A DNA stretch of 64,000 nucleotides from Mytilus edulis (lineage: Eukaryota). The notes under the pieces were generated by a model. The model was not told the origin of the DNA, made no database searches, and worked only from the letters and a program-made list of their open reading frames with translations. Numbering within the stretch: the first letter of the stretch is position 1; each line of letters opens with the position of its first letter. Made by a program: the position numbers and the translations under genes. The stretch spans positions 32,364,001-32,428,000 of the forward strand of contig NC_092352.1 of assembly GCF_963676685.1 (NCBI RefSeq). Direction: 5' to 3'. This document shows positions 13,264 to 62,400 of this stretch, in pieces.

Positions 13264-13273
13264 CTTTGTATTG

Positions 13274-30900: not shown

Positions 30901-33900
30901 GAGTTTTTAATTATAATAGTAAGTCAATACTACAGCACCAATGTTCAAAATTTAAAATCAACCAAACTATAAAAAAAAAATATAAGGAAGATGTGGCAGC
31001 CCAATATCATTGTCAATGGATTTAGTGAACCCATTTGCATGAACTTATATGTATAAATATTGCACTGACATTATTTTTATGCCCCATTTATGGGCATTAT
31101 GTATTCTAGTCTGTGCATCCATTCCTCTGTTCGTTCGTCCGTTCGTTCATTCGTCTGTCCTGCTTCAGGTAGTTTTTGATGAAGTTGAAGTCCAATCAAC
31201 TTGAAACTTAGTACAAATGTTCCCTTTAATTTGATCCATTTTCGCGGTCCACTGAACATAGAAAAATGATAGTTTGGATGGGGCATCCGTGTACTAGGGA
31301 CACATTCTTGTTTTATTTTGAAATAATTTGTCTTTAACTTTTTTTTTAAATTTGATCTTTGATTTGTTTTCAGATAAGTATTCTGAAAACCCACATGCTT
31401 ACCCACAGTGATACCAGAGACTTTCCATGCTCGATACAAGGTTGTACCTATGCCTTTAAAACAAAAGGGGCTTTAAAACGTCATCTCAGAAGACATACAG
31501 GTATTGTTAAACACAATGATACTAGAAACTTTCCATGCTCAATACAAGGTTGTACTTATGCCTTTAAAACAAAAGGGGCTTTAAAGCGTCATCTCAGAAG
31601 ACATACAGGTATTGTTAAACACAGGGATACTAGAGACTTTTCATGCTCAATACAAGGTTGTACTTATGCCTTTAAAACTAAAGAGGCTTTAAAGCGTCAT
31701 CTCAGAAGACATACAGGTATTGTTAAACACAGTGATACTAGAGACTTTCCATGCTCAATACAAGGTTGTACAATGTACCTATGCCTTTAAAACAAAAGGG
31801 GCTTTAAAGCGTCATCTCAGAAGACATACAGGTATTGTTAAACACAATGATACTAGAAACTTTCCATGCTCAATACAAGGTTGTACCTATGCCTTTAAAA
31901 CAAAAGGGGCTTTAAAACGTCGTCTCAGAAGACATACAGGTATTGTTAAACACAGTGATACCAGAGATTTCCATGCTCAATACAAGGTTGTACTTATGCC
32001 TTTAAAACTAAAGAGGCTTTAAAGCGTCATCTCAGAAGACATACTGGTATTGTTAAACACAGTGATACCAGAGACTTTCCATGCTCAATACAAGGTTGTA
32101 CTTATGCCTTTAAAACTAAAGAGGCTTTAAAGCGTCATCTCAGAAGACATACAGGTATTGTTAAACACAGTGATACCAGAGACTTTCCATGCTCAATACA
32201 AGGTTGTACCTATGCCTTTAAAACAAAAGGGGCTTTAAAGCGTCATCTCAGAAGACATACAGGTATTGTTAAACACAATGATACTAGAAACTTTCCATGC
32301 TCAATACAAGGTTGTGCTTATGCCTTTAAAACAAAAGGGGCTTTAAAGCGTCATCTCAGAAGACATACAGGTATTGCTAAACTAAAATCATAATAGATTA
32401 CTAAAAATAATATTTTATTATTTCATATGAATAAAAATATGAGCCAAAATTGACTAGAATATAATATTGAAGACCTTTTATTAAAATATCATGTTTTAAA
32501 GTATCCCATCAGCTGAATAATTTTGTCAACAGAAACAGTTTGTTTTATCTCTTCCTTGAATGTGGTTGCCTTGAATATTTGAAGTCTTGGGGCTATTTCC
32601 ATTCAGGTCAAACCAAAGACTTTCAAATTTGACAATTTGACAAGCTGGTTCTATGCTATGATCTGTATTGTTAGAGTGACATGTCATGTTGAGGGTAAGC
32701 CCATTAAAAACTTACTTGGCATGTTTGTATACCATTATATTGCCTTATTAGTAAGGATGATCTGTATTGTAAGAGCGACATGTCATGTTGAGGGTAAGAC
32801 CATTAAAAACTTACTTGGCATGTTGGTATACCATTATATTGCCTTATAAGTAAGGTGAAGAAGAAAAAAATTGTGCAGTACAAAGGTTGAGCCAAATCCT
32901 TATCAGGAAAATAACTAGAATAACAGATGTCACAAGCAGTGGAGCTAGATTAAAATTCCAAAATAATATTTTTTAAATAATGGTATTAAATGATAAAAGA
33001 CATTCTGTTATTTATAAATGAAAGATGTAATATATTTTTATTTTGTTATTTAAAGGAGAAAGACCTTATTCCTGTGAGGCATGTGGTCGTAGTTTTACAG
33101 AATCTGGTGCTCTGACTAGGCACATGAGATCAAGGTAGGTTTTGATTATTGGGAGATAAAGTGTTTGAGGAAAGAATTTTCATAGAAAGCTTGTTTGAAT
33201 ATATATGTTACAAAAAACATGACTACGCTTAAAACAGAATTTAGTACTTTGTACTCATACTTAAGACTGAAATTTCATAAAACAAATACCTTTGGAGTTA
33301 CTCTTGACGGCATATCAGAAAAGAAAAACAATTTACTGAATGCTCACAATAATATTGCACAAAGTGAGATGAATGCATTTCAAAATACTATTTATTGAAT
33401 GTGCTGAACTGAAACAATTTCTTTTTAACTAATTAAATGATATTCACTGGTTTCTAAGTATACTTTATTTATTGGTCGCTATTAATGCTTTGACAGAAGT
33501 ACACTATTTAACTTTTTGCTTCGAACACATCTCAGAAATAGGGCTGAAAACATCATAGAACTTGCATACCTACAAGTACTTTCAAAATACTGTTCTTTCC
33601 AGAAATACAATTTATAGAATTTGCACACAAATAAATACTTTACATGAACATTTTTTTAGGCTCATGGAATTTTATAAGTTGAAATGAATACTTTATAGGA
33701 ATATTTAAAAAAAAAACAAAAAACAATACACTTACAAATGTTCTAAATGGAAGTACACAGAGTGACATTATACAACATCAATTAAGTATTTTCATTTTAA
33801 GAAAAGCCAACCTGTTTACTACAACTTATCCAAGACTTGATTATCATTTGTAAATTGATATGTATATATTAACTGCACAAAAGTGAAAAATTTGAAAAGG

Positions 33901-36900
33901 AACACTTGATGGAAAAAAATACTTTCCATGTTTGAAGATAGAATTAAAGTCACTTGTAAATGTACATGATAACAGTTATCCTTTGTCTATTTTTAGAGTG
34001 CCTTGTACTAATAAGTCAGATAGTGATTTACCAAGGTATAAAATGAAATGGAATCTGCCAAATCAAACCATTCATCAAGTATGTTACAATTGTGGTTATT
34101 AGAGATAAAATATTATACATGTTATGCCATGTAAAATTAACTTTCTGGTTCATAGACACCACTGTGTTAGCAAAAATCTGCTACTGACTTGTGTTTATTA
34201 CAAACAAAAAATAGAGAGAATGTTTAAAAGTCTGTGTTGTTCAAACTTTACTGCTTTCAATTTAGTCAATAAGCCATAACTCTAATGCAGAAGAAAAAAA
34301 AATTATTTAACGGAGTTAAGACTTTCCAGTAAACTTGTACTTTTGACAAAGTTTGCATAAATGAAAATGCTTTTTTCCTTTGATTATTGATAAAGGAGTA
34401 GGTCCAGTAAGACCCCTTTTTGGCCCCAAAATATAGCAGTTTAACAAGATTGTTAAAATGTAAACTTTTAGTTATTTATTGGACAGTAGAATGCTTCTGT
34501 TACATAAATATGGGCTGTTTTTGACAATACAATGCACATATATCGGGTACTAGCACTATTAAGTCATGCTAAATTACTGAAATCTTCACAATTCTAGCAT
34601 TTTAGTTAAATTTTAGACGGTTTTCGTGTGAACGAAAGTGGCCGCATTTGTGTTCATCCTTGATATTGAAATGTAAGTTGTATTTTATGATAATATATAA
34701 CATATATAAAGGTTGAGGATGAACATGGATGCTGCCACTTTCATTTTTGACAAAAACCATCTGAAAAGTGACATTTTTCGGCATATTTGGTAGATTTTTC
34801 ATATTTGAGCTTGAATCGGGTCGTTTTTAATGACTAAATCAGTTAAAATCTTTCACAAAAACTAATTGATTCAAATGAAATAGACACTTAAGTGTTTAAA
34901 AAGTGGTCAAAATCTTTCGTAAGATGAACCTGAAATTTGAGGCCAAAATCGGTCCTTACCGGACCTACTCCTTTTCAAATGACACAACTGTTAAAGATTA
35001 TAGCAATGGGATATCTTGAGTGACTTTCAGATCATACACTTTGAGAGAAAACCAGTGGAACTACGTATTGATATGTATTTTTTTTAGGAATTAGAGTTCT
35101 GTTATGAGTTTGATATTTAATATTGTTCACTTTTAGATTGGTGAGACAGACATACAGGAAGTTGATGAAGAATCATCTGTTGTACAAATATCTGACCTCG
35201 TGGCTGCAGCCTTGAACTCTGATACCCTACATACTAATGCTGATGGTAGTATACAGGTAGTCATCTCAGCAGATCAAAATGATATAAGACTGACTGGCCT
35301 GGATGGCAGTTCTGATGAAGTTGTGGTGATAAACTTGGGAAATGCTGAACAAGAAGAGACAATTTCCTCAACACACTGTCAGGTATGTGATAACTTCAGT
35401 TTATTAGAGGAATGTACAGTACAGATATCCATCTCTTTCTTAACAAAAAAAATATATTGAATTAAGAGAAAAGATGACAAACAACAGGTATTTAAATTGA
35501 CTATACATTAACAGGTAAGTACAAAATTAAAACAATATTTAACGATTTTACTACAATAGCACTAGGCAAGTGCATGTGTTTGACATGATCATTATAGAAA
35601 TATGTTCATGATTGCATCAGTCTGTCTTTTAAGGTTAATAATACTTTAAAAGATGGTATTAATTTTCTGACAGGTCTGTGAAGAGCAGTTACCAACAATA
35701 TACCAGCTAAAGGAACATCTGAGGAAGCATATAACAGATCATGCTAATAGGTGTAAAATCTGTCATTTTATATCAGAGGATCAAGAACAGCTGATTAAAC
35801 ATTACACAGCACATCACCCAGAAGAGGTAGGTAGTGTTTATCTCCATTTTTCACTCACATAAGCCCAACATTGATACTGTTCAGTAAGAATCTGACCAAT
35901 ACTTAGAATAAAATATAAATGTACAATTTAGAAGAACTTGTTTTATTTGAAAAATATTTATTTGGTGATTAAGTTATTTTATAAATGTTGACAAGACTTA
36001 ATTGATTTTTGAGCCAATTGTGTATATACCTTTACACAAATAAACAAATGTATGTCTGTGCTTACAGACAATTTTGAACATCTTCAGATTCATTCCTGAT
36101 GTAGGAAGAAGAGTTCTATTTCATCCCTGTCATTATTAAAATAAGTTGTTATAGCTACTCAAGAGTAGGGTGTCTAGTTATCTGGTCCGAGACCACAATT
36201 GTCGTCCCTTGATTTTCGTTGTCCACAAATATAGTCCCTAGTTTTGACAGTGGGTTACTTGCCATTAATATTTATACCCCTTCCAAAGGAGTAAGTTCGG
36301 TAAGGGCCATATTTGGCCCCAATTATAAAGTTCATAGTTACAAGACAATAAATGCTTTAAGTTGCCTTAAAGACATGTGAGAAAGTTAAACAGAACTGTT
36401 TTTGTCAAAGTTTAATTCTAACACGTTGATTTTTACATCCCAAAAAGGTCAAGATAAGGGATTTTTGTGAAATTTGACAAAATCACCTGGATTTCAACCA
36501 AATAAAGGACCAGGAAACATAGAGCGCAGGCGTCGACAAGCTTAATATTCAAATAAGACATGTGAAATGTCTTCACAAACATTATTTTACAAGATCTTTG
36601 TTGTCGACGTATGCGCTCTATGTTTCCTCTCCAATAATCTATGGAAATTTACCCATTTTCATTGATTTTTACATGAAAAATCAATATGAGTACAACTTGT
36701 GACGTCATAATGAAACGCAGAATTGTGAAATTTTCAATAAAATGGCTTATATCCTATCCAGTCAATGTATTAGCTATAATTTATCGTGATATTGGTAAAT
36801 AAATCCGAATTTGAAATTTACGCTAAAAAATGGGGCCATTTTAGGACCTTATCGAACATACTCCTTTATTTCTCCATGTTTAATGCCTCAAATTGCAAGT

Positions 36901-39900
36901 AGGGGGGTAAAATTACACTAAAAAAAATTGGGTCAAGAATTTTAAAGGAAAGTAGTGATTTGGTCCAGCTGAAAAAGGTTAAAAATGAGCACTTCGGAAG
37001 CTGTCAAAAGATTTCAAGACGCCCTTAACATAAAATTGTCCATAATTTGAGTTAGAGCCAATGAAGTTTTCTATAATTTTGATATAATTTGTCCCAAAAG
37101 TAGTACAACACACTAAAAATTTCATTGAGAAAGCGCAGGTGGGATTTTTTAAATTTTCATTTATGTTCTAAAAGAAATGCACTACGAAATAATTGTGGTC
37201 TCAGACCATCTGTTACTTTCTGTAGAATGTTTGAATGGAAAGAGATAAACATAAAAGGTTCATTTTGAGTTTACTTGGTTAAAAATGTATGATCTTGTCC
37301 CATAACTTCTTGCAAGTCAATCTATCATGATCTTTTGTCATAGATCTCTATCCTACTATGACTATGACTGCTACTTCCCTCAAAAGAGAGTTCCTTAAGA
37401 TGGCTTTATATATTGGATCACTATAACAAACAATACTGACATTGCCAAAATTTGTATTTTTTTTGTGATTAACACAAACTTTGGATATTTGTTATAAGAT
37501 ACAATTGTTTATCCAGGTGAAACCAAAGATAGCTGTAAGGTTCCTTGTGTGGTAACTACTGGGTGTTCATACTGTGTTGCCAATCAAATACTGATATGAC
37601 TCATCTATTAGTGTCACTTTTCATTGGAGTCTTCAAATACTGGAAAAACATATATAAATTTATAAAAAAAAAACAATTAATTCTCGAAAAGTACAAAATA
37701 AATCTTTGACTAAAAAAGCACAAAATAAATCTTTGACTAAAGAAGTAAAAAATAAATCATTGACAGATTTTGTAGTTATAAATTATTATTTTTCAGAGTG
37801 ATGACATACTTGCGGTACCTTTTAAAGAAGAAGGGTAAGTTTGTAATTATTTTGATCAGTGCAATATTAAAGCTTAAAATATGTTCCAGATTGTGCTTGT
37901 TTTCATTGCTGAATCAAACATTTTTATAAAGATTATTTGGGGAAAAAATTGTTCTGTGTGTACAATTTCTTTATACTTTTTAAATGCATTTAACTTTGAA
38001 ACTCAGATGCTGAGAAGAAATTATAATGTAGTTACTCTTTTGTATTAGTACATGATAGACAGGCTCCCTCAGCATTCCCAATTAAAAAAAAACAAATCTC
38101 TGCAAATACTATTTCAATGCAGTTTTATAGGTTCAATGATTAACAAAATGTTAGCAGTTAATATGAGTGATATAAAAAATATTGGTTTAATGTCATAAGG
38201 TTACATCAATACCTTCATGATTGTGATAAAAAAAAGTAAACAAGACCATAAAATTCCATGGGCTATAATTTAAGTATTTTAAATTCAAACTTAATATGTG
38301 TATTTATTACTATGAATCTGTAACAACAGACAATTCTGTTTGTAGTGCCAAGGATGCATTGAAGCAGTTATTAGAACTACCAGATGATGATGAAGAAAAT
38401 GACAAGTTAACACAGAAATGTCCTGTTTGTCTGAAACCATTTAGAGGAACTTCATATCTCAAACTACATATGAAGTCACATATAGGTAGGTTAATGTTTA
38501 TCTCAAGCTACATATGAAGTCACATATAGGTAAGTTAATGTTTATCTCAAACTACATATGAAGTCACATATAGGTAGGTTAATGTTTATCTCAAACTACA
38601 TATGAAGTCACATATAGGTAGGTTAATGTTTATCTCAAACTACATATGAAGTCACATATAGGTAGGTTAATGTTTATCTCAAACTACATATGAAGTCACA
38701 TATAGGTAGGTTAATGTTTATCTCAAACTACATATGAAGTCACATATAGGTAGGTTAATGTTTATCTCAAACTACATATGAAGTCACATATAGGTAGGTT
38801 AATGTTTATCTCAAACTACATATGAAGTCACATATAGGTAGGTTAATGTTTATCTCAAACTACATATGAAGTCACATATAGGTAGGTTAATGTTTATCTC
38901 AAACTACATATGAAGTCACATATAGGTAGGTTAATGGTTTCAAAAAAAAATGGAAATTCATGGTGTTCCATTAGTTATAGGCACAGAAAAGTAAAATAGC
39001 TGTTTAATAATATTTATAATATATTTTATAAACTAAACTTTCTTGCTTTCTGTAAAGTTATTGAAATGACCTGAAGAAAATGTGTACTTTTACATAAATT
39101 ATATTTGTTTTATTTTTCAGGTGAAAAAGCTCATAAATGTACTGTGTGTGAAAAAAGTTTTATAACCAAAGACACTTTAAACAAACATATGAGTGTTCAT
39201 AATACAGAAAGGCAGTATAAATGTGGTGAATGTGGTAAACTGTTCAAAAGGATCTCACATGTCAGGGAACATCTCAAAATACATTCTGTAGACAGACCAT
39301 TTCCTTGTTCGGTTTGCTCCAAGTCATTCAAGTCTGCTGTAAGTAATATAACATAAATTTTCTCAGTGTTTATACCGAAGTCTTTTTACTTTTTAAATTT
39401 TTTTTTTAAATGTGTAAAAATCAAATTTAAAATATATAAAAATGTGCAAATTTTAAATAAATCAAATGAACTATTAGATGCTTGATGTTTGCAGTCATCA
39501 AAATAGAGCTGTGAATGGATGTCAAGATTTGTAAAATACAAATGTAATTGAAGTTAATACTTGTAGATTGTTGTCCATTTTTAGCTCACCTGACCCGAAG
39601 GGCCAAGTGAGCTTTTCCCATCACTTTGCGTCCGGCGTCCGGCGTCGTCGTCGTTAACTTTTACAAAAATCTTCTCCTCTGAAACTGCTGGGCCAAATTA
39701 AACCAAACTTGGCCTCAATCATCATTGGGGTATCTAGTTTAAAAAATGTGTGGCGTGACCCCGCCTACCAACCAAGATGGCCGCCATGGCTAAAAATAGA
39801 ACATAGGGGTAAAATGCAGTTTTTGGCTTATAACTCAAAAACCAAAGCATTTTGAGCAAATCTGAGAGGGGTAAAATTGTTAATCAGGTCAAGATCTATC

Positions 39901-47245: not shown

Positions 47246-47311
47246 AAGCATTATGCTTTGGTTGTAGTTGATTCAACTACAATAATGGACAAAGGAAGAT
47301 AACTCCTATTT

Positions 47312-48495: not shown

Positions 48496-48529
48496 TTACT
48501 TTTAACAATTACAATAGATATTTTTAGAA

Positions 48530-48899
48530 AATATATTAGATTCCTATATTTCCATTTGTAAAGTAACACCACCAAAATTCAAACTTGATCTCGATTTTGT
48601 AATAATACGCATTGTGTAAAAGTTTAATAACTTTTGGTTGAGACGAACTTAAATAGAGAATGGAAACAATTTTCATTTGTAAAGGGCATAACTCTAGAAA
48701 AGTAAAAGTGACACCACCAAAATGTAAACTTGATCTGTGTTTTGTGGTAATAAGCATTTTGTATATTTATTTTATAACATTTGGTTGATGCAAAATAAAG
48801 TTAGAACTTAAGAACAGAAACCAACTTTGGGACATATGTACATACAGACAGACAAGGGTAAAACTTAATGCCCCCTCAGTTAAGATGGGGGCATAAAAA
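48530..48899 (-). mobile_element. HINE-like element relic
   Basis: Repeated caccaccaaaat..aaacttgatct units, (caga)n, end atgccccc...gggggcataaaaa; related units at 62960-63335. Confidence 0.6.
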
Positions 48900-49426
48900 C
48901 AGATTATGCATGAAAATATTAATTCATTATAGAACCACATAAATCAAGGTCTGACTGATGTTTAAATATAATTTTGGAAGGGATTCTTGAATCATTTAAA
49001 TTTCCATCTCCAAGTCATGAATAAGAAACACAAATACATCATGAAATTTAATCAGCTATAACAACATTTAACATGATGACTTGACAAAGAGATTCTATGA
49101 TGTAAGAATTAATTGAACTCTCCAGAGTTCATAATGTGTTATGTATATCATTTTTGATTTAAGATATTATGTCGTCTTTCCTTAATAGAATATTTCAATA
49201 TCCATAACTTCAGTAGCAATATATTTTTCTTTTCTTTTTCAACATTTCACAACATGTTTATATAACAGTTAAATTCTAAAAGACTAGATAATTTGAAAAT
49301 TTAACGTTCAAGTTCTACTAATTTTTTATGAGTAAAAGTCACACATTTTCTTAATAAATGATGGAGGTTTGTTATACAAAATAAGTTTACAATATGTACA
49401 AACAATTTACACAAGACTAAAAAGTT

Positions 49427-52400
49427 CTACAATGAAGGATCCCTGAATCTGGAAGCTTGTTCTTTTACTCGTCTTTCATATTCTGTTCTGTTTTGACTGA
49501 AAGAAAAGATGAGATGCAATAATAAATAAAATGTTTTAGTGTCTTTTATTCTTTTTCAAAAAGTCCTGGGGTAAAGCAAGGTTAGTAATGTCACTTAAAA
49601 CATAAACCTTGACAACTTTCTGATTTTACTTTGTAAGTGTATAACATGTTGGTATATGATCTAAATACCAGTACTGTCTGTCAGAAGAATTTTGTCAGAT
49701 TTTATGGACTTCCACTTTATGAATTTACCTCAATATTTTTGTTTAACTTCTTTAAAAGACTTTTTTATACTTAGACGTATCTGACAGTTTTGTTAATTAC
49801 ATGTAATACCTACCAATAAATTGTGTAAGCCTCTGCCTGTGCTGGATCTTTTATGTTAGGTTCATTCAATAATTCTTGTATACCAAGTAAAATCTGTCAA
49901 TCAAAAAATATAACACATTATTGTCACATATAAGCCACATTTCTCAAAGAATTCTTTCTAGCACTCTGAAGAGTTCAGTGCACTTGAACACATGATTCAA
50001 AATAATACTTTCAAGTAATTTAATTATCTTAAGTACTGATAATGGAAAGGTAACACTTGCAAATTTTCAAAAGCAAATAATTTATAGTAATTTTACAAAT
50101 AGTGCTGTTACTATGACAAAATTGCCCATTTATGCTGCCCATTTTTTGCAAAAAACAATACCCATGTAGTTGTGTTTTCTGTCTGCTCTAACACATTGCA
50201 TTCCTATCGGTACCCTTACAGTTTTGAAGGAAATTGGTCAAACAATGTTAAAAAGCTGGCATGTTTTGCCATTTAACAAACCTGTTTTATTGTAACTGCA
50301 GGCCTCCAATCTTTTTCTTCATCAAGCAGTGAAAGACAAACTGTTCCTGATGGATAAACATTGGGATGGAAAAGTGGAGGTTCAAATTTACCTGCAACAG
50401 AAAAAAATAAATTAAAGAAATAAGCAAGTTGATTAAAAAAGAGTAAGATGTTCTGATTATCATGTTTTTTTCTTCATATTGATACAGTAAATTATCATGT
50501 GGAAGTCACAATATGATGTTTTTTTGACAAGTGAGTACAGCAAAGGAGTTCATACTATGAAAAAGGTATGGCAGTCAACATTTTTGATAACCTATTGAGG
50601 TTATGTTGAGCTTATTTGACACCACAAAGCCATTATTAGCAGCTTCCCAAACTGTGAGATAAAGGCACAAGTATGATTGCTAATAAGTTTTTAAAAAGTC
50701 CACACTAATGACCTTGATGATACATACTAACATGTTACCAAAGCACTCTAAAACCAATAAATCAACATCAATATGTTATTATTCCAGTGAGTACATCATC
50801 TCTTTGGATTAACTGTGTGATTACAATTAACAATTATTTTCTGGTATTTCAGTACACTGCATTTTTATTTTGACAATTGCAATTGGAGAATACAAACTGT
50901 GTTGAACAGTTCAACTGTGAGTTTTATAACAAACAAGCTATGTTTATCTGATGAAACAAACTTTGTTTATCTGATGATTCAAACAGTCACAAGGGTATTA
51001 AAGACTAAACAAATAGCATTGAGTTACCAAAGATAAATTACAAATGCAACCAGCAGAATGATAGATGAGGAACATGGTCATTAAATTTACCCATGTCAGA
51101 ATGAAATAATATTACTACTTTGTAAATAAATCTTACATTTAGGAGGTGAGCTAGGATAGTCTTCTTTAAATAACATTCTTAATCTGTATAATCCTCCTTC
51201 CCATGGTGTCTGAAAATAATCATTTGTAAATATAATTTTTATAATAAGTTGATGATCCTATCTAGTAGCAAATGTTACATGCATATCAGGACAGGAAAAT
51301 GTTAATGTGATGTGACAAATATTCCATGAGTATGAAACTGGTAATATCGCAGTCCCACAAGGCCACGATCGCACAATTTGTAAAAAAATGAAAATTTTGA
51401 TGATCATATTACGATCGTGTAGATTGCATTAAGGTCGTATCATGGTCGTGGTGAGGTCTTCCAAGATCGTGATGAGCGTGGCCAACTTTGAACATGTTCA
51501 AAACAATCGTGGTGCGGTCGCAGTGAAATCAGGTCAAAGATCTCAAAGGTCGCTGTACCTTCGTAGCGAATTTCTATTCAGAGAGACTCCGCTACGATAT
51601 CACAGAGACGTTATTACGACCTCACTACGACCATCACTTTCTCACCACGACCCAAGCACACTTCAACTACAACCATACCACGTTTCCACCAAGCTGTTCA
51701 AAACCACAATACCATTCTAGCACGCCCTTGTCGTCCTCATCACACTCTTCTTACAACCACACTACGTTCATACTACGACTATCATTCTCATTGTCATTTT
51801 CTTGTCATTTTGAATTTCTCTAACGGCTCAACCATGCTTCTCATTTTTATATAGATTAGACTGTTGGTTTTCTTGTTTGAATAGTTTTACACTAGTAATT
51901 TTTGGACCCTTCATAGCTTGCTGTTCGGTGTGAGCCAAGGTTCCGTGTTGAAGGCCGTACCTTGAACTATAATGGTTTACTTTTTTAAATTGTTACTTGG
52001 ATGGAGAGTTGTCTCATTAACACTCATACCACATCTTCCTATATCTATTGACACATCTGTGTCATCTCTGTTATCGTTCACTAAAATATCGTTATTTGAA
52101 CTTGATGGACCAGCAATAGGTTGTAATTCAGGTTGGATTGGTTGGTCCGACATCTCTTCTGGATCAGGATCTGTTACTTTAAGGTGACCCTTTGCCTCTA
52201 CATCAACCCTTACCACCACGGCCACGTGTTCTAGTAGATTTTGGTGGCATGACTGTATTGTTTTTAAGAAATCTACGTATTAATCAGAAATAGAAGGAAT
52301 GGAACTGTATATATGAAACACCATGTTGACGTTATTGCTGAGAACTGAGAGCGTAGTAAGATTGCGGTATAAACGTATTATAATCGTGGTAGAGCATGCC

Positions 52401-53460
52401 ACAATCGCAGTAGAAGCGTGGTGCAATCGGATAACTCGTGATATGGTCGTAGTGGGAACGTGATGAGCGTCGAAAGATCTTGATAAGTGTAGTGAGGTTG
52501 CAGGATAAGCGCAATGAGAACGTGGTATAATCGTAGCGGGATTGTTGTAGAAGGGTAATGAGGATGTAGTAGCATTGTGAAAGCAACGAAAAATTACATT
52601 TTTATGCCGCTCATACCGCGACCTCACCACAATCTGAATTTATTTTAGATCGCGGTGAGCGTGGTTCGATCGTTGTCTAGTGGGACTGGGGATTTAGGTA
52701 CAATAATGAGCTGGTTTTTAAACAAGGTAGGTAACAAGGTTTCAGTCCTCAGGAATACATTTAATACAACAAAGAATCATTATTCTGACCAGTCATAGCT
52801 CCTACTCCTAAATGCAATGTACTAAGCATAAAAGCTTCAAATATCAATTTTCAACTACATGTATTTGGTTTGACCTAGTCTGGGTTAGAAAGATAAAACT
52901 AGTAAGCATATTGACAAAACTAAAAAAAAGTACTTGAAAAATGCTTTACAGTTCATCTGTGCATATTTACATATATATATATATATATATACAAGAGTCA
53001 TGAGAGTATTGGGAACCAAATTTCAGTGTTTATATATTTAGTGGTTATCCTGGCTTCCAATCTTTCCAAAAAATATATGAAATCATTATTTACCCCTTTC
53101 TTGCCTGGTATTGCACATTCCCAATTCAATAAATTTAATGTTCCATCTGGATTTTTGGTTGGTCTGGCTACAAAACCCTGCAAAGGAAAATAATATAACA
53201 ACATACTCTCCCTCAAAATAAATTAAATCCTACAGAATATTTGTTACAGGAATATTAAAATGACAAATACAGTGCACTTTTTTATTTACAATACTTCTTG
53301 AACAATACAACAAGGAACTCAATGACATTAATGTAATTCTATGAAATAATTTTCTTGTTTTTAGTCTATAATAATATATAATAGTTTGACTTACAAATGG
53401 GTGATCTTTCCTCCAAGCTTTTCTTTCTTCACTCAGTCTTCCTACAGCTATGCCAGACAT
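49427..53460 (-). CDS. UBE2I: SUMO-conjugating enzyme UBC9, 160 aa; exons 53460-53395, 53177-53094, 51209-51137, 50391-50282, 49893-49814, 49496-49427
   Basis: Spliced translation [56 protein letters not shown]...[70 protein letters not shown]. Confidence 0.98.
51348..52691. mobile_element. GC-richer non-autonomous DNA transposon in a UBC9 intron, with a ~195-bp dispersed repeat nested at about 51853-52048
   Basis: TIRs cagtcccac.ag.c.acgatcg / cgatcgttgtctagtgggactg; the nested repeat end gttgtctcatt..ca.tcataccacatct also occurs near 3068 and 12612. Confidence 0.65.
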
Positions 53461-56288
53461 CTTATTAGTTCAACTGCAAAAGTAAAATACATACAAATTT
53501 ATTGATAAATATTGAAATTGGTTACATGAATTACAAATTTTCCTTCATGTTGTGGATGTAGGTAAATCATGAATTTGAATGGTCAACAGAGAACAAATTT
53601 TCTTTAGTCTTTTCGGTTGAATTTGGCAGCTTTGTTCTTTGGCCACTGAACTGTATTTCCCATTAGCAGTTGGAAAAAATTTCTAACAAGTTGAAGTTTG
53701 ATTTGATAAAACAAATTGCTATTCGTTCAAGTCACAGTAATAAGTTTGTTCACTCATCAAAAGAAGACATAAATAAACAAGTAGCTTTTCTACTAAAAGA
53801 AATGCACCTGAACATAATTGCCTGTTTGGTTTGAAAGATCGGAGAATTATAATATAAAGATGTGTAAATCATTCCTCATAAACATAATACATTGTACATG
53901 TAGAAAACATCTATAGATCCTAAACATAACTATATGTAGACTACCATTAGTTTGAGCAAATTTGTGTTTCAAGTAATTTATGAAAGAAAACATTACAACA
54001 TGCAAAATAGGAGCCAACCACAGGATGTTCCATTTTGAGGGCACTGTTTTAGAAATTTGTATACTTTAAACAGGTGATCAAATTGTAAACACTTGAAAAG
54101 CCCTAAACCTTATTTTGAGAAATGTATTCTAACCAACCACATACAGGTAGTCATTAATAAATAACTTATATGCAACATCAAACATAAAACAAATTGTATT
54201 GTTTTACCACAAGGTTTTAATTAATATAAAGCCAAAGAATATCATTCAGTCTCTATAAATAGTTACCCAGTTTCACTCCTAAAAGGTCCTTTTGTATTTC
54301 TTTATTTTATTTTATTTTTATTCCTATTTCTACATGTCTACTGTTAAAACAATTTAGTATATTTGTTTATTTCTCCTTTGAAATTATTATGTGTAGTCCA
54401 TAAGATTAAAAGTAATTCTATTTGCAGTTATAAATTATTGAAGAAATGGAATAGTTTTAAATAAATATTATCGTTATTTATCTGTACAATTTTTTTTTTT
54501 ATAGAAATTTTTATTCAACGAAAGAAAATGAAAGTTTAAATTAAAAGAAAATGCCCTTTTTGTTTCTTTTTAACCATATATTAAAATAGAACATCTAAAG
54601 CAAACTCTACCTTTTTTCTCTTCAAATATCAACCACCTTCAACAGGAACCCTAACATGCGTCTCTAATTTAAAAAGTAAAGGTATGAGATACTTATATTA
54701 GAGTCTGACTTTTATTACTCCAACAAAGTCTTAAAAGATTAAATACTTAGAAACTCCAAAATGGATTTTAATTCTTCTTTATAAACCTCTTTTAAGTATA
54801 AACATTACTTTTTCTAAAGTTTTGGATAATGTTTTATATCATGATCAATTAGTAAAATATAACTCATTAGCTGCCAAATAATACAACTTGAATGAAGAAA
54901 AAAATATTCAAGTCAAATGTTTATAATAATTGGTTTATTAATTAAAGCAATGGCTTTAATTATCACCATTCACAAAAATAGTGTCTCATTTTTTTTTAAC
55001 ATGCCTCCAGCTATTCAATATAATGTTTATATTGCAGGGTACAAAACAAAATTGTTTTCCTTTTATTTTTGGACATGTTGGAAATCTATATAAATTCCTT
55101 CAAAAACATCTTCAAAAATAGGGATGCAATTTTGGAAAGGTACCAGTCAGTACTCCCTTTAATCACAAATGTTAAAGCTAAGTCAAACTGTTTATGATTT
55201 TGTAAAACTTTACTTTTCAGCAAAAATGACCTTGACAAGTTTTGTCAATTACTAATACATGTATGTGTTTATACAATTTAAGCATAATTACATTTACATT
55301 TACATCCTTAACTATTAAGATTATAACACAAAATTTGTTTATATAACAATAATCAGCCTTTTATATCTCTACCAGTGAGGGTGGCAGGTGCCCTTTAGAT
55401 GTTTTTACAACAATGAAATGTTCAAAATGGCTGGATCCACCCCAGAGCAGGGATAGCAGTATAGGTCACTGGTGCTGTGTGCAAAAAATTAATGTCTCAT
55501 GATTCCATTTCTTTGGATGACACTTTGGTGAAAAATTAAACTACATTGTAACAGTAATTTCTTTTTTATATGACAAAATTATTGGAAAACAATTGATTTT
55601 TTTACCAACAGCAAATTGGAAGCATGATTTTACTTCAAATTACAGTTTCAATTTTGGGAAAAAGTCACACAGACTAGTCACTTCTTAGTTATCTTGTCAA
55701 AAGATTAAGTAACTCAGAGAAGTAAATTATTTGGTCTATAAAAATAGACTAGTCGGTAGTCTAATAAGAATCTTCTTCCTTATAATTGAGTTTTGTTTCT
55801 AACAGTCTACAGTAAGCTTAAACTCTGTGGGCCTACCTATGGTCACATTACAAATCTAGTCCCCTTTGGTTACATACAGTATTTACAATAAAACCCAATT
55901 GATAAGGTTAAAATTATTAACAATCATTGAACAATTTGAGTCTGGGATGCAGGATGGGGCCTTAACCAGGAAAAAGGGATTTAGTCTGAAGGGGTTGTGG
56001 TAATTCAAATGTTTATCATTCAGCTTTGTTTTCAATAGCATGTCATTGAAATAGTTACTCCACGGATTAGAAAGAATAACTTGGATATCCTGTTTCCATT
56101 TAGGCAAAGAACCATTCATGATTTTCTTGTTTTAACGAAGATAACACGAAAAAATAGAATCTATTCAAAGATAACAGTTGTATATATAAAATCGTACAAA
56201 TATGTGAGGGTACTTTTACAGTTTTATGTGTCATTCAAAAGAGTAAATGGTTTTAAAGAAAAATCCTTTCTCATTTCACGAAACTTAC

Positions 56289-56430
56289 CGCTGGAAAAAC
56301 TATGTCACGTGAACAGATCAATTAGACGCTTTACATTAATCTAACACCTTCGCGTCAAGCGTTTGTACGATGTATGTCAACTATTTTTTTCTAAGGGAAG
56401 CAACTATGTAAACAATCCCTTTCTTCACAG
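56289..56430. promoter_or_regulatory. Putative compact bidirectional promoter of UBC9 (-) and RINT1 (+)
   Basis: Minus-strand donor CG|GTAAGT at 56288 pairs with the acceptor at 53474 before the UBC9 ATG exon; RINT1 ATG at 56431; CpG-enriched; E-box GTCACGTGA at 56304-56312. Confidence 0.6.
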
Positions 56431-59400
56431 ATGGCAAAATCAGAGAAGAATGTCCACGTTACAGAATACTTGAACCAAAATATAAAGACTCTATCAGATT
56501 TAAAAGATGTTCATAAAAATATAAAAGAAACTGTTGAGTCATTAGGACAACAAGTAATTAATGCCTTAAGTCATAGGAACAGTACACATGAATGAATCCA
56601 TGACAAATCGCCCCACTGGCAAATCGCGAGTTTGTGAAAAAGTGTGGCGATTTGGTGTTGGGCGTTTTGCTAGTGTGGCGATTTGTCCTGCTTCCCACAG
56701 GAATGAGGATGAGCAATTTCATTTTGCTCTGTTTTTGAACTGTTGAAACATTTATGAGGGTAGTAATGGGGGTACCTTCATGACGTATATCATCGTGTAA
56801 TGTGTTTTCGTACTAATAACAATTTTCACTGCTTACGGTTTTTACTGTTGAGTTTTTATTTAGGTGTTTACTCAAATTTAAAAAGCATGTCCTGTAGATT
56901 GATTTTAGGTATCTAGTTTTTTTGTCAATGATTTCTACGATTTTTTACTGTTTCCGATTACTTTGCGATTTTTGTATGTCAAAAAAACGGCGTCATATGT
57001 TTTCGTATGAAATAAAAATTGGATCAGTACACGGACAGGAAATGACTACAAAATCCGGAAATACATTTTTTCTAAAGTCGTGGTTCGGGTGATCGCTTAA
57101 ATCTTAAAAAAAGTTATTAAATACTTTTCAGTACAAAAAATTACTAGTAAAAAGTGTAAGGTTGGTGTTTCGTGTGATGAAATTTTTACGGATTTTGATT
57201 AATTTCAGATTGGCACCTGGTTTGTACAAAATACATTATTTTTTCTAAAATAAAATGCAGTTTTCAAAATTTATGATTAAATATAAAAAGTTAAGACTGT
57301 TTTCATCTTCATGTATCAAGGATGTATAAAAAAAATTGTCAATGAAATATTGAATAGTTAGATTTTGAACAACCATTTTATATAAGAACCCTGCTAATTT
57401 TAACTCGATGGTTTGTAATTAAAACGGCCAAAAAAACACATGACAGTCATACGTCTTGAAGATCCGGTGTCTGACTTGCAAAAAACATATCTGGACTTTA
57501 TTTTAACCCTTCAGAATTTTTTTCCACAACTATTCTAGTGATGCGTATTTTTGACATTAAATAAAAATGGCTAAATAGGTCAGTTTTATTTAATTTGTTC
57601 TAACGTCTTTAAAAAGCGACGTTGAATATGTTTTAAATATATCAAGTTGTAGTGGTGTTGTTGTTCTAAATATAGAAACAGAAAAACATGCCACAATGTA
57701 CGCGTATGCAGTCGAAACCGACGAAATGTGGTTGATACGAAAACATATGACATACGAAAACATATGACACGACGATAATGGTAAAAATTCTTGCCAAATG
57801 ACGTTAACAGTAATTTTTAGTGCATGACGATTAATTGTACACTTTCTTTTAGACGATAAAATTATCTGAATTTGACGAATCAAGCTATTTTTTTTCCAAA
57901 AATAATGGTGATGATAACTATTTGAGTCTTTAGTCTTTATGAAGCAGTCAGGGGACTTACTTAAATAAGTGATTTTCTAAATCACTGATTCAAGTAACAT
58001 TATTTCCATAAAGGTTGGAAGTTAGAGTTGTCTTTCTTTAATAATCACCTATTTAAGTAGTACAAATTAATCACTAGAAGAAGTGATTTAATTTTATTGT
58101 AGCTTTAAATATAGAATACTAATGATCCAGGGACTAATTATGTTTCTAAACTTATCAGAACCAACATCTGTGTTGTCTAGGATGACCAGGTCATTTCAGG
58201 TGATGACCTTGTACTGAATCTAGGATAATGACATAAAAATCACTTGTTTAAGTATCAGACCTCAATTTCCTTCAAAAAAATCACTTCTTTAAGTATCATT
58301 CTTATAATAACCCCCACTAATTTCAACATCCCCGAACAGTGAAATTTTTATCGCGAACAGTAGAATTTTATTACATAATGATAATCTGAAAGATAAAACC
58401 TTGAACTTCACAGGAAAAATACTCCCACTGCTGGGAAAAATCTTTTAAGAAAATATCAGTTCATTATGTAAAGCCATTATTATAGCATTTTTTCAACTAA
58501 AATAGAATTTTCAGCTAAATGATAGCATCAAAGGCATAAACCTTTCTACTTAAAAGAAGCAAAAAGTTCATTTTTTTTAATTTTACTAATTTATAAAAAG
58601 ATATTTTTTAAACCTATGTGTTTAAAATTTTGAAAAAACTACAAAATCCCAATTTGTGACAAAACCTCGAATTTGCTACTCAAATAAGTGATTTAAAAAT
58701 CACTTATTTCAGTACATTGTAAGTCCCCTGACTGTTGAGACATCTGACGAATCACAGTAAAATTAAACCAATTTGACACTATAGGTAGTAAAAAATTACC
58801 GCTTGATGCCTGTCAGTAAAGGGCATATAATTTACATCCCTCATTTATGCCTAATTTCTATACATGTCTACTGTGCACATACATTTGTAGATTACTAATA
58901 TTATAGTTGTATATTTTGTGAGAGTTTAATGAAATGAAGGTTTAAATAACCAAATTGAGGTTTCCACAGGGACTTGTCAGTGTCTTCAAGACGAAGTGTA
59001 GTATAAAAAATGACCTTCCATTAGTGGCAGAACCAGGGGTTGTAGAAATTCCTTGTTCAAATTACATATTTAAGGTAAAAAAGTGCGGACTATACACAAC
59101 CAATTACGGTAATGCATATTTTATCTACAAAATCTAATATTACTGCAACAATTCTTTTATTTTTCTTAATAATAATATTTTTAAAAATGAAGTGGCGACT
59201 TGTCTTGGTCCCGAATTGTCGAAAACTGATGCCAAAATTACTTCAGACTTTGGTGTCAAAATGTCTTGTTACTGGGTTGTAACCACCCCCTGTTTTAGGA
59301 TCAATGCTTTTGAATAGGGACATGATAATGATGATATTGTTGACCCCCCCCCCCCTCCTTTTCAAAATGACTGGACTGCCCTCAAATTTTTGTCCAAACA

Positions 59401-62400
59401 GTAAATGTACAAAATGTATATTCATTATTGTCACAATAGACCTTTAAACTTTGGATGTCAAACAACGATTGCAGTTTCATTCTTGCATCTGTAGATTAAA
59501 ATTATTTCTTTTATGTTGTCAAATTTTTATAGGAAGGAATGCCTGATGCTTCATATACGTGTATTTGTCAGCTTTAACAAATTACTTCTCTTCCAAGACA
59601 CTTATATTTTGACGTATTTAAAAGGAGATGATGCCTGATGCAACAGATATTTTGGCATCAGATATTTTGTAATATGACGTCAAAATTTTACAGGAACCTG
59701 TGTCATGTCCAATAATGGAGGACAAATAGCCATAAGTTGTATTACAGTTCTTCCCTGATTATTGCGGAGTTTGCATTGCTAAAGTTTTATAGTGGCCTGT
59801 GTTATTTTGTGTGAAATGTTTGTCCTTTCAGGCTTTTTTTCTTATTGCTGCATTAATCATGTTAATGCTGCATGCTCTCTGTCCTGCTTAATCTGTAACC
59901 CATCAATTGATGAATCATTTTTTTTCAACAACCAAAGACTAACAGAAATGTGAACCCTATTAAATCATTGTAATATTAGGCTAAAAGTGATTGGTATAAT
60001 CGGTGCAAAAAACTTAGGCCACTGACTTTCTGAGACATTGTGTTTACAAATGTTTGATAATGCAAAAATCTCTACTCTTAAACTAAGCATCCAAGTTAAT
60101 TTCTGAATGTCATCAAAAAAGCTTTTATTTTTCAGTTACATGAAGCCAGTTCAAGTTTGCCTACTGAGATAGACTATGCTACACAAGGTGCTAATGATAC
60201 ACAGACTGAGGTGACAAACATACAACACCGTAAAGATAACCTTCATCATCAGGTCGTGGAACATGTTAGAAATCAACAGGATGTTTGTAAAGAACTGGAA
60301 AAAGTTACGACAGAAATTCAACAGTATCAGTATTATCTGGCATACCTACAGCTGATAGAAGAGGTTGACAAAATGAGGTCAGTTATACTACAGAGATTTT
60401 TAATTGTCATCTAACATGTATAAAGTATCCATGATATAACAGTGTATAACCTATAAAGAGTTGAAAATAGAATGTCAAGTGAAATGACACCTTCATGCGG
60501 TACAAGCTGGTAGAGTAATTAGGATGGATAAAACCTCTGCTATCATTTCTTTTTGCACCATGTTATGCCTGCATACAATAGCACCACAGTATATTATTTG
60601 ACAGTATGTCTGTTATCCCCTCCTGTAATAAATTTTGGTTCAACTTGTTGCTTCAGTTTAACATATTTATTTTAACCTATAGTTATCAATGAAGTGCCGT
60701 AATGGTCTCATCAACTTAGAAATGAAAACTCTTGTTTATTATAAAAAGATAATATATGAATAACTAAAAAAGTAATAGAGAACAAAAATTTAATTCATAT
60801 AAAGCATTTAAGTTTAACTATCATATATGTTGTATTTATATTTTAGTTCTGATATTCAGACAGCTATGCAGAAAGATGTAATGAGAAGTGCTGTAGAAAA
60901 TTTTCAGACCATGACACATGTCTTATTGTCAAATATTTTATATTTTAGTTCTGACATTCAGACGGCTACATTAACAGATGTCATGAGTAATGCTGTGGAA
61001 AGTTTTCAGACCATGACGCATGTCTTATTGTCACATATTTTATATTTAAGTTCTGACATTCATACGGCTACGTTAACAGATGTAATGACCAATGCTGTGG
61101 TTTTTAGGACCATGACACATGTCTTATTGTCATATATTTTATATTTTAGTTCAGATATTCAGACGGCTATGTTAACAGATGTAATGACTAATGCTGTTGA
61201 AAGTTTTCAGACCATGACACATGTCTTATTGTCAAATATTTTATATTTTAGTTCTGACATTCAGACGGCTACATTAACAGATGTCATGAGTAATGCTGTG
61301 GAAAGTTTTCAGACCATGACACATGTCTTATTGTCACATATTTTATATTTAAGTTCTGACATTCATACGGCTACGTTAACAGATGTAATGACCAATGCTG
61401 TGGTTTTTAGGACCATGACACATGTCTTATTGTCATATATTTTATATTTTAGTTCAGATATTCAGACGGCTATGTTAACAGATGTAATGACTAATGCTGT
61501 TGAAAGTTTTCAGACCATGACACATGTCTTATTGTCAAATATTTTATATTTTAGTTCTGACATTCAGACGGCTACATTAACAGATGTCATGAGTAATGCT
61601 GTGGAAAGTTTTCAGACCATGACACATGTCTTATTGTCACATATTTTATATTTAAGTTCTGACATTCATACGGCTACGTTAACAGATGTAATGACCAATG
61701 CTGTGGTTTTTAGGACCATGACACATGTCTTATTGTCATATATTTTATATTTTAGTTCAGATATTCAGACGGCTATGTTAACAGATGTAATGACTAATGC
61801 TGTTGAAAGTTTTCAGACCATGACACATGTCTTATTGTCATATATTTTATATTTCAGTTCAGATATTCAGACGGCTATATTAACAGATGTCATTAGTAAT
61901 GCTGTGGAAAGTTTTCAGACCATGACACATGTCATATTGTCATATATTTTATATTTTAGTTCAGATATTCAGACGGCTATGTTGACAGATGTCATGACTA
62001 ATGCTGTTGAAAGTTTTCAGACCATGACACATGTCGTATTGTCATATATTTTATATTTTAGTTCAGATATTCAGACGGCTATGTTGACAGATGTCATGAG
62101 TAATGCTGTGGAAAGTTTTCAGACCATGACTCATGTTTATCATAAACACAGTGGATCCCATTGTAAACATCTCCTCAAATTCATCAAAGACACAATTCTA
62201 TTCTGGTATAAGATACTTCATGAAAAACTTGCAAGGTACAATATATACTATTTGGTAGTTCTTAACAATTTATGTAGATCATGATGATTAAAGTATAATT
62301 TATCTGATTGATAAAGATGTTTTTCTACCACTAGTTAAAGTTATTTTAAAGTTGAATTAAATATTAATTGCTTGTTGCCTTTCTCACAATGATACATGTA

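What the first reader, a model, noticed from the sequence alone, without database searches (positions are those of the whole stretch)
31404..62136. Recurrent splice-junction minisatellites: three unrelated arrays, each amplifying an exon/intron boundary of a conserved gene
Seen: the three largest non-transposon tandem arrays in the window (108, 44 and 102/99 bp units) share no sequence, yet each unit is part coding exon, part intron, and contains the splice site. Donor arrays extend downstream of the exon and the acceptor array extends upstream, so one terminal copy always rebuilds the normal exon. Coding-exon boundaries are a small share of the window, so three of three looks non-random. Inference: either (a) a mutational process tied to splice junctions, such as transcription/R-loop or RNA-templated repair followed by unequal exchange, or (b) survivorship, because junction-spanning duplications are the exonic ones that splicing can hide, or (c) a copy-number-tunable alternative splicing device. 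I cannot tell from one window whether this has been described.
Basis: partly seen in the sequence, partly recalled or inferred. Interest (0 to 1): 0.88.

Follow-up and report, generated by a model that had tools for sequence, protein, structure and literature searches.

The report
Mussel minisatellites built on splice junctions
Three introns in this mussel (Mytilus) window hold tandem copies of the neighbouring exon edge plus its splice site; such repeats are already known (amphioxus "mirages", the human F7 repeat), but here they are common and the long ones lie on splice sites more often than chance.

Summary
There are three unrelated, locus-unique arrays: 108 bp x9, 44 bp x11 and 102/102/99 bp x13. 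Each repeats an exon edge plus its splice site. The two donor arrays run into the intron after C2H2 zinc-finger exons of an E4F1-like gene. The acceptor array runs upstream of RINT1 exon 3. In each case the exon-proximal copy gives the normal exon. RINT1 proteins of five Mytilus species (717 aa) carry one copy.

The kind is already described. Amphioxus has "mirages" at both 5' and 3' boundaries. Human F7, IFI6, CBS, LMNB2 and PDGF have donor-junction minisatellites. This scan also noted many such arrays in other windows of this genome, and one follow-up reached the same reading.

The non-randomness is partly supported. Genome-wide, the donor consensus AGGTRAGT lies in 36-66 bp-period arrays 2.5x more often than three composition-matched controls. 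Arrays of 8 or more copies show 7x (p=4e-4); 3-7-copy arrays show none. So growth or persistence is biased, not seeding. The samples are small.

An orthologous zinc-finger junction in an unidentified species is also amplified.

No reads or second assembly could be reached, so decoy use and copy number are untested. The tunable-splicing reading has no support.

The parts
31374..31500 (+). Coding exon of a multi-C2H2 zinc-finger gene (E4F1-like). It encodes [42 protein letters not shown](G). The authentic donor is CAG|GTATTG after 31500.
   Evidence: Pfam zf-C2H2 at residues 17-41 of 42, E=6e-6, above the cut-off. Orthologous ORFs P0162-P0165 align over the whole exon and stop or continue at the same HTG position. 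Sequence.
31404..32381 (+). Array 1: nine 108-bp units (97 nt exon end + 11 nt intron start), so nine tandem donors. Copies 2-3 are in frame, copy 4 has +7 nt, copy 5 has His->Arg, copy 6 has -1 nt and a CTG|GT donor. The variants follow an A-B-C higher-order pattern.
   Evidence: TRF; unit parsing; only this locus matches in the genome.
33056..33134 (+). Next exon of the zinc-finger gene, (G)[26 protein letters not shown]. It completes the HTG|ERPY linker when the first donor is used.
   Evidence: Sequence read; P0162 has the same two fingers contiguous.
38346..38485 (+). Coding exon ending in the finger [23 protein letters not shown](G). The authentic donor is TAG|GTAGGT after 38485.
   Evidence: Pfam zf-C2H2 at residues 24-45 of 46, E=4.6e-5 (24.1 bits, just under the 25.2 cut-off); sequence.
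38455..38938 (+). Array 2: eleven 44-bp units (31 nt exon end + 13 nt intron start). Nine copies are identical. Copy 2 has the stronger donor TAG|GTAAGT. Reading past donor 1 meets TGA after 12 codons.
   Evidence: TRF 99% matches; parsing; donor scores.
39121..39338 (+). Next exon, (G)[13 protein letters not shown]..., with two more fingers. It completes the HIG|EKAHKC linker.
   Evidence: Pfam zf-C2H2 x2 and zf-H2C2_2.
60136..60377 (+). RINT1 exon 2 (...LIEEVDKM + AG), donor GAG|GTCAGT.
60838..62139 (+). Array 3: 13 units of 102/102/99 bp (about 24-27 nt intron end with AG + 78 nt exon start). Units 2-4, 5-7 and 8-10 form a 303-bp higher-order repeat 99-100% identical between repeats. Unit 1 is the most divergent and unit 13 is the authentic exon start. 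The whole array is one open frame (60818-62281, 488 codons).
   Evidence: TRF; parsing; identity matrix and translations; eight decoy copies re-found by protein search of the genome.
62062..62235 (+). RINT1 exon 3 as used in annotated proteins, (S)SDIQTAMLTDVMSNAVESFQTMTHVYHKHSGSHCKHLLKFIKDTILFWYKILHEKLA. The acceptor AG is at 62060-62061 and the donor is AAG|GTACAA.
   Evidence: 100% identical to Mytilus RINT1 proteins of 717 aa.

Best explanation
The three arrays are 'mirage'-type junction minisatellites. In each, a short tandem duplication happened to span an exon/intron boundary. It was then expanded by unequal exchange or replication slippage inside the intron.

The copy that adjoins the exon keeps the authentic splice site: the first donor for arrays 1 and 2, the last acceptor for array 3. 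The normal mRNA is therefore still made. The other copies are intronic decoys that are mostly or wholly unused and evolve without coding constraint. They are by-products of a minisatellite-rich mussel genome, filtered by selection so that only duplications that leave one intact site survive.

Shown here: the anatomy, the coding nature of the exon parts, the single-copy annotated RINT1 proteins, decay in the array 1 decoys, and higher-order-repeat turnover. Inferred: which site is used in arrays 1 and 2 (by analogy with F7, LMNB2 and PDGF), and neutrality.

The genome-wide excess of long arrays on donor sites is real but modest. Its cause is left open: biased growth or persistence of exon-edge units.
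For: Anatomy and coding evidence.

RINT1 proteins of M. edulis, M. galloprovincialis, M. trossulus and M. californianus are all 717 aa with one copy, VDKM|SSDIQTAM..., and the two shorter M. coruscus models join exon 2 to exon 3 at the same point.

No protein of 268-854 aa in 5.8 billion carries array 3 read-through peptides.

Array 1 decoys carry +7 and -1 nt indels, a zinc-ligand His->Arg change and a weakened donor. Array 2 decoy use meets a stop after 12 codons.

Array 3 shows central homogenisation (a 303-bp higher-order repeat, 99-100% identical) with divergent edge copies. Amphioxus mirages show the same turnover.

Precedents: in F7 only the most upstream of 5-9 identical donors is used, even against pseudo-sites with a better match to the consensus. 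LMNB2 and PDGF use only the authentic site. IFI6 and CBS use the first three. Amphioxus mirages do not disturb regular splicing.

The intron parts of the units (11, 13 and about 24-27 nt) are just long enough to keep the proximal site intact, as a survivorship filter predicts.

The open frame of array 3 is not compelling evidence for coding. About 5% of substitutions would create a stop, so P(no stop) is 0.2-0.3 for the roughly 30 substitutions seen.
Against: No RNA or DNA reads could be obtained, so the use of decoy sites in this species is untested.

Pure neutrality with uniform seeding does not explain three things. The donor consensus is about 7x enriched among arrays of 8 or more copies. 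In this window 3 of 3 high-copy arrays, but 0 of 16 low-copy repeats, touch a junction. The orthologous zinc-finger junction is also amplified in another species (P0165).

Two of the three unit lengths are multiples of three. Array 3 stays open over 488 codons, including a 3-nt indel; the joint chance is about 0.02.

M. coruscus model P0009 includes a 21-nt piece of an upstream copy, so decoy acceptors may sometimes be used.
Confidence: 0.6

Rival explanations
1. A junction- or exon-edge-linked bias drives these arrays. Units that carry a splice site and exon edge expand, or persist, more than other minisatellites. Possible causes are co-transcriptional snRNP or R-loop effects on replication or repair, locus-specific sequence features, or weak selection for extra U1 or U2 binding sites. 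Junction arrays would then be a major class of high-copy minisatellites in Mytilus rather than a random sample.
For: Triple-motif matches per site: donor AGGTRAGT 0.0272, against 0.0115, 0.0128 and 0.0083 for three composition-matched controls. In the 88-118 bp class the normalised ratio is 5.2x.

Array-level rate ratios are 2.6 for all arrays (p=0.004), 7.2 for arrays of 8 or more copies (p=4e-4) and only 1.5 for 3-7 copies.

In the window, 3 of 3 high-copy arrays against 0 of 16 low-copy repeats lie on junctions.

The same zinc-finger junction is amplified at least 3x in an unrelated contig (P0165). RINT1 has at least 2 copies in M. coruscus (P0009).

Dozens of first-reader notes describe such arrays in other windows, and one follow-up reports about 4-fold (unchecked leads).
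Against: Counts are small: 13 donor arrays on one chromosome against 52 control arrays, grouped by eye from truncated listings. Match counts are heavy-tailed.

Some donor-motif arrays may be coding repeats (for example the 57-bp unit at C1:7.86 Mb) or whole mini-exon units.

Control sites lie genome-wide, so a general genic or euchromatic bias is not separated from a junction-specific one.

No mechanism is shown. Unit GC (0.30-0.35) is not unusual, and microhomology at the array ends is 1 nt or less.
Confidence: 0.3
2. The arrays are functional, copy-number-tunable splicing devices. Array 1 would add one or two extra in-frame zinc fingers through donors 2-3. Array 3 would add 33-34-aa modules to RINT1 through upstream acceptors. 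Array 2 would down-tune expression through nonsense-mediated decay.
For: 108 and 102/99 are multiples of three. Array 1 copies 2-3 are intact fingers (Pfam finds 3 zf-C2H2 in 31356-31787). Array 3 is open for 488 codons. IFI6 and CBS do use the first two pseudo-donors. M. coruscus model P0009 has a 7-aa insert from an upstream copy.
Against: Array 1 copies 4-6 are broken. No extended RINT1 protein is found in any Mytilus annotation or transcript-derived set. The array 3 decoy peptides include intron-derived hydrophobic filler (VLLSNILYFS) and many non-conservative changes. The openness is explicable by chance at the 0.02-0.2 level. The P0165 copies are frameshifted.
Confidence: 0.06
3. The arrays, or their copy numbers, are assembly artefacts.
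For: No reads or second assembly could be examined. Copies that are 99-100% identical (array 2; the array 3 higher-order repeat) are the hardest to size.
Against: The copies carry structured variants and indels. An independent M. coruscus annotation shows a partial second copy at the same RINT1 site. The same kind of array recurs genome-wide and in another organism's contig. The contigs are chromosome-scale.
Confidence: 0.04

Closest known systems
Amphioxus 'mirages' (Adh3; globin genes BflGb6 and BflGb9; other loci), from PMC3087553 and the references in it
   Same: They are minisatellite-like tandem duplications of an intron-exon boundary. Both 5' and 3' boundaries occur. Units run from 10 to 160 bp. 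Many copies keep AG/GT. Regular splicing is undisturbed. The array centre is homogenised and the edge copies are left out. They are described as possibly a general phenomenon in that genome.
   Different: The host is a different phylum (a mollusc). Copy numbers here are higher (9-13; up to dozens in other windows according to unchecked notes). An over-representation on donor sites, confined to long arrays, was measured here. Length polymorphism and somatic instability, shown for Adh3, could not be tested.
Human donor-junction minisatellites: F7 IVS7 (37 bp x5-9), IFI6/6-16 (25 pseudo-donors), CBS IVS13, LMNB2 (100 bp x10-15), PDGF intron 4 (81 bp x16-18), from PMC1557585
   Same: The first monomer spans the exon-intron boundary, so the authentic donor is followed by identical pseudo-donors. 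The most upstream site is used: alone in F7, LMNB2 and PDGF, and with the next two in IFI6 and CBS.
   Different: In F7 the unit is mostly intron (4 nt exon + 33 nt intron). Here the units are 70-90% exon. The human cases are isolated loci. The paper as read here describes only donor-side arrays. Splice-site use is not measured here.
Intron gain by tandem genomic duplication (AGGT model), e.g. PMC3265369 and PMC4974935
   Same: A tandem duplication creates extra splice signals that splicing can hide. Mirage copies have been proposed as raw material for new introns or exons.
   Different: In that model the duplication lies inside an exon and creates a new intron. Here an existing junction is copied many times and no new intron is shown.
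Tandem (mutually exclusive) exon duplications, e.g. the paired myosin-head exon hits at C9:18.47 Mb seen
   Same: Local tandem copying of coding sequence together with splice signals.
   Different: Those copy whole exons with both splice sites, usually in 2-3 copies, and the copies are used alternately. The units here hold only one exon edge and one splice site.

Membership tests
Mirage / junction-spanning minisatellite | Head-to-tail tandem array (3 or more copies) of a 10-160 bp unit | tested here: met
   TRF: 108 bp x9, 44 bp x11, 102 bp x12.9; unit-by-unit parsing.
Mirage / junction-spanning minisatellite | The unit contains part of a coding exon, the splice signal and part of the adjoining intron | tested here: met
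   Pfam zf-C2H2 ends at both donors. The start of RINT1 exon 3 is conserved in orthologues. GT or AG is present in every copy.
Mirage / junction-spanning minisatellite | The authentic copy sits at the array edge next to the exon and the regular mRNA is still made | tested here: inconclusive
   Met for array 3 at the level of annotated proteins (717-aa RINT1 with one copy in four Mytilus species, and the same exon 2-3 join in M. coruscus). For arrays 1 and 2 it is only inferred from the finger-linker logic. No RNA reads were available.
Mirage / junction-spanning minisatellite | Concerted evolution inside the array with divergent boundary copies | tested here: met
   In array 3 the higher-order-repeat copies are 99-100% identical, while unit 1 and units 11-13 are 73-97% identical to the others. 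Array 1 has an A-B-C variant pattern.
Mirage / junction-spanning minisatellite | Copy-number polymorphism or instability between haplotypes | not testable with these tools
F7-type VNTR with silent pseudo-donors | Only the most upstream of the identical donors is used | not testable with these tools
   No reads. Indirect only: donors 4 and beyond of array 1, and donors 2 and beyond of array 2, would give premature stops.
Copy-number-tunable alternative-splicing module | Decoy sites are used to give stable, in-frame isoforms | tested here: inconclusive
   No protein with array 3 read-through peptides among 5.8 billion sequences, and none in the RINT1 cluster apart from a 7-aa insert in one M. 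coruscus model. E4F1-like isoforms could not be searched because of the length filter.
Transposon-borne satellite | The unit or its flanks recur at many loci | tested here: not met
   Units of arrays 1 and 3 match only their own locus in G000. Array 2 was checked only against about 160 kb by local BLAST and gave no hit. The 126-bp and 147-bp arrays of the window do recur elsewhere.

The most novel reading that the evidence does not exclude
In Mytilus, minisatellite units that carry a splice site and exon edge grow to high copy number several-fold more readily than other units. Junction arrays would then make up perhaps a tenth to a quarter of all high-copy minisatellites, and they would recur at the same junction in distant species (the E4F1-like finger junction). 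This would point to a splice-signal- or exon-edge-linked instability or selection that has not been described.
Probability: 0.3. Interest if true: 0.75.

Novelty: new member of a known kind. Interest (0 to 1): 0.5.

Why it matters
Junction minisatellites are natural experiments in splice-site choice: many identical donors or acceptors in a row. If the mussel genome holds hundreds of them, with different unit lengths, site strengths and reading-frame outcomes, then one long-read RNA data set could test how far the 'first site wins' rule found for human F7 applies outside mammals, and whether a mirror rule holds for acceptors.

The arrays also lengthen their introns markedly. The array makes up 72% of RINT1 intron 2 and 57% of the intron after the array 1 exon. 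They offer raw material for new exons or introns, and they are a trap for gene prediction, as the M. coruscus model with a 7-aa insert shows.

If the excess of long arrays on splice sites holds up, it would link splice signals or exon edges to tandem-repeat dynamics. That link is not part of current accounts of how minisatellites arise.

Tried and rejected
There is no RNA or DNA read evidence.
3. Exon-centred sampling. In the hit lists themselves, no exon hit recurs periodically 3 or more times. The sensitivity for exon pieces of 35 aa or less is low, although a calibration with RINT1 did re-find 8 of 12 decoy copies.
4. Naming the zinc-finger gene. The search of protein representatives with a finger exon was swamped by poly-zinc-finger proteins, and the ESM Atlas gave only generic C2H2 clusters.
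5. Coding selection on array 3: the open frame is not improbable enough to argue for it.
6. GC-rich exon units as the cause of expansion: unit GC is 0.30-0.35 against 0.32 for the window, so this is not supported.
7. Microhomology at the array ends: 1 nt or less for array 1 and ambiguous for array 2. It was read by eye and is not informative.
8. TRF on about 64 kb of other fetched loci found no array of 5 or more copies. The sample is too small to set a background rate.


Full report
WHAT IS THERE

The window is G000:C9:32364001-32428000 of a 1.37-Gb Mytilus assembly. Its RINT1 exons are identical to M. edulis XP_071129632.1 (P0008).

Tandem Repeats Finder gives three arrays that outscore all others:
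- A1, 31404-32382, 108 bp x9.
- A2, 38455-38936, 44 bp x11.
- A3, 60835-62140, 102 bp x12.9 with a 303-bp higher-order period.

The A1 and A3 units hit only their own locus in the whole genome. A2 was checked only by local BLAST against about 160 kb and gave no hit. The window's other two long-period arrays (126 and 147 bp, 3-4 copies) belong to dispersed repeat families. The phrase 'the three largest non-transposon arrays' is therefore accurate.

ANATOMY

A1. The exon 31374-31500 encodes a C2H2 finger (Pfam zf-C2H2, E=6e-6, ending one residue before the donor). Its donor is CAG|GTATTG. The unit is the last 97 nt of the exon plus 11 nt of intron. The next exon (33056-33134) begins GA GAA AGA CCT TAT, which gives the canonical linker HTG|ERPY.

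A2. The exon 38346-38485 ends in the finger [23 protein letters not shown](G). The unit is 31 nt of exon plus 13 nt of intron. The next exon (39121-39338) gives HIG|EKAHKC.

A3. The unit is about 24-27 nt of intron end (polypyrimidine tract and AG) plus the first 78 nt of RINT1 exon 3 (62062-62235). The exon part, SSDIQTAMLTDVMSNAVESFQTMTH, is conserved in orthologues of 100%, 77% and 70% identity.

Donor arrays run downstream and the acceptor array runs upstream, so the exon-proximal copy always gives the normal exon.

ARE THE EXTRA COPIES USED OR CONSTRAINED?

RINT1. The proteins annotated in M. edulis, M. galloprovincialis, M. trossulus and M. californianus are 717 aa with a single copy, VDKM|SSDIQ... 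The two shorter M. coruscus models join exon 2 to exon 3 at the same point. A search of 5.8 billion proteins with the array-derived peptides found nothing but RINT1 itself. One M. coruscus model (P0009) carries a 7-aa insert, SDIQTAI. This equals a 21-nt piece of an upstream copy ending at a cryptic GT. So that species has at least two copies, and decoy acceptors may occasionally be used or mispredicted.

A1. Copies 2-3 would add whole fingers in frame. Copy 4 has +7 nt, copy 5 changes a zinc-binding His to Arg, and copy 6 has -1 nt and a weakened donor.

A2. Any decoy donor gives a stop after 12 codons.

A3. The array is open for 488 codons. Only about 5% of substitutions would create a stop, so the absence of stops among about 30 substitutions has P of 0.2-0.3. 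The joint chance, with a unit length divisible by three and a 3-nt indel, is about 0.02. The decoy peptides also carry intron-derived filler and many non-conservative changes.

A3 has three 303-bp higher-order repeats that are 99-100% identical, flanked by divergent edge copies. This is the signature of recent unequal exchange.

Splice-site use, copy number and polymorphism remain untested.

IS IT KNOWN?

Yes. PMC1557585 lists human minisatellites whose first monomer spans an exon-intron boundary: F7, IFI6/6-16, CBS, LMNB2 and PDGF. It shows that in F7 only the most upstream of 5-9 identical donors is used, even against stronger pseudo-sites. IFI6 and CBS use the first three sites.

PMC3087553 describes amphioxus 'mirages'. 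[quoted passage not shown] Regular splicing is undisturbed, and the arrays show concerted evolution that leaves out the edge copies. [quoted passage not shown] This scan has also noted many such arrays in other windows of this genome. One follow-up (s1-832272) reached the same reading, with 'about four-fold over chance' for donor sites.

IS THE ASSOCIATION NON-RANDOM?

Within the window, about 55 coding junctions give a target share of 5-8%. Three of three then has a probability of about 1e-4 to 5e-4.

For a genome-wide test that needs no annotation, I counted three consecutive exact copies of an 8-mer at 36-66 bp spacing and normalised by the 8-mer's total count:

| 8-mer | triple matches / total count | rate |
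|---|---|---|
| donor AGGTRAGT | 1445 / 53,177 | 0.0272 |
| its reversal, TGARTGGA | 1048 / 91,398 | 0.0115 |
| GT->TG swap, AGTGRAGT | 682 / 53,319 | 0.0128 |
| reversed swap, TGARGTGA | 598 / 72,450 | 0.0083 |

The donor motif is 2.5x over the pooled controls. At 88-118 bp spacing the normalised ratio is 5.2x, but a few giant arrays dominate that count.

I then grouped the listed matches into arrays:
- Donor motif: 13 arrays, 7 of them with 8 or more copies, in 111 Mb of C1.
- Controls: 52 arrays, 10 of them long, in 911 Mb.

The rate ratios are 2.6 for all arrays (p=0.004), 7.2 for long arrays (p=4e-4) and 1.5 for 3-7 copies. One donor-motif array (C1:92146285) is recognisably the His-box exon end of a ubiquitin-specific protease, with only 6 nt of intron in the unit.

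The window shows the same contrast. None of its 16 low-copy repeats touches a junction, while all three high-copy arrays do.

So seeding looks roughly uniform, but units that carry a donor or exon edge become, or stay, long more often.

Caveats:
- The counts are small.
- Arrays were grouped by eye from truncated listings.
- Some donor-motif arrays may be coding repeats.
- Control sites are genome-wide, so a general genic bias is not separated from a junction-specific one.

A FURTHER HINT OF LOCUS DEPENDENCE

The last protein search returned genomic ORFs from other, unnamed organisms that are orthologous to the A1 exon. P0163 and P0164 read into the intron at the same HTG position without any repeat. 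P0165 comes from a 489-kb ENA contig. It contains 'RRHTGTSLSH' twice, 41 residues apart. It also contains the finger read in the +1 frame ('RDVHMPSRLKA') twice, 43 residues apart. That means at least three tandem copies of exon end plus donor plus intron start at the same junction, with a different intron sequence and a different unit length.

VERDICT

What it is: mirage-type junction minisatellites in two conserved mussel genes. This is a new member of a known kind.

How it works (inferred): the exon-proximal site is used, and the remaining copies are intronic decoys that turn over by unequal exchange.

- (b) survivorship explains the orientation and the minimal intron parts, but not the excess.
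- (a) a junction-linked process is open, with evidence for a growth or persistence bias.
- (c) a tunable splicing device is unsupported.

Noticed in passing
Protein P0165 (unnamed 489-kb ENA contig; no locus available): The orthologue of the array 1 zinc-finger exon in another, unidentified organism is read through its donor. It shows at least 3 tandem copies of exon end + donor + intron start ('RRHTGTSLSH' twice, 41 aa apart; the finger read in the +1 frame twice, 43 aa apart). The same junction is therefore amplified in a second species.
   Followed up: partly
Protein P0009 (M. coruscus RINT1 model), corresponding to window 61141-61170-type units: The model has a 7-aa insert, SDIQTAI. It equals a 21-nt mini-exon from an upstream array 3 copy (acceptor to the cryptic donor GCTAT|GTTAAC). 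The array therefore has at least 2 copies in M. coruscus, and it confuses gene models or is occasionally spliced.
   Followed up: partly
G000:C1:2768842-2815650; C1:44210256-44230434; C3:19693088-19698990: Macrosatellites. One has a 1423-bp period with about 34 copies, each carrying AGGTAAGT. Two are arrays of intact kinase-domain ORFs with 1868-bp (10 or more copies) and 1765-bp periods.
   Followed up: no
G000:C1:8977032-8984307: A 92-bp unit repeated 80 times or more. It holds both an acceptor-like CTTCTTACAG and a consensus donor AG|GTAAGT, so it looks like a whole mini-exon-plus-intron unit rather than a single junction.
   Followed up: no
Whole genome G000: The donor consensus AGGTRAGT (53,177 sites) is much rarer than its reversal TGARTGGA (91,398). 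It is as frequent as the GT->TG swap AGTGRAGT (53,319), although real donors should add to its count. This may mean cryptic donors are depleted.
   Followed up: no
G000:C9:18472376-18474904: Paired Myosin_head exon hits cover the same profile segments (121-152 with 122-171; 88-119 with 90-127) and lie 340-690 bp apart. They are likely mutually exclusive duplicated exons of a myosin heavy chain gene.
   Followed up: no
window 15806-16363; L031:1-472; L014:47-194: A 126-135 bp tandem unit (GGTTCTTTGATATGCT...) recurs on other chromosomes at 81-87% identity. It is a dispersed, probably transposon-borne, satellite family.
   Followed up: partly
window 31325-31370: A T-rich 24-bp x1.9 repeat ends 2 nt before the acceptor AG of the array 1 exon. 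The acceptor side of this exon therefore also carries a small, purely intronic duplication.
   Followed up: no
window 12832-13416 (-), 16895-18916 (+), 50276-53469 (-): Neighbouring genes: a RING1/RNF2-like exon, an intronless RING/B-box (TRIM-like) ORF of 674 codons (both with Pfam hits), and UBC9/UBE2I-like exons read by eye ([22 protein letters not shown]...). None of their junctions carries an array.
   Followed up: partly
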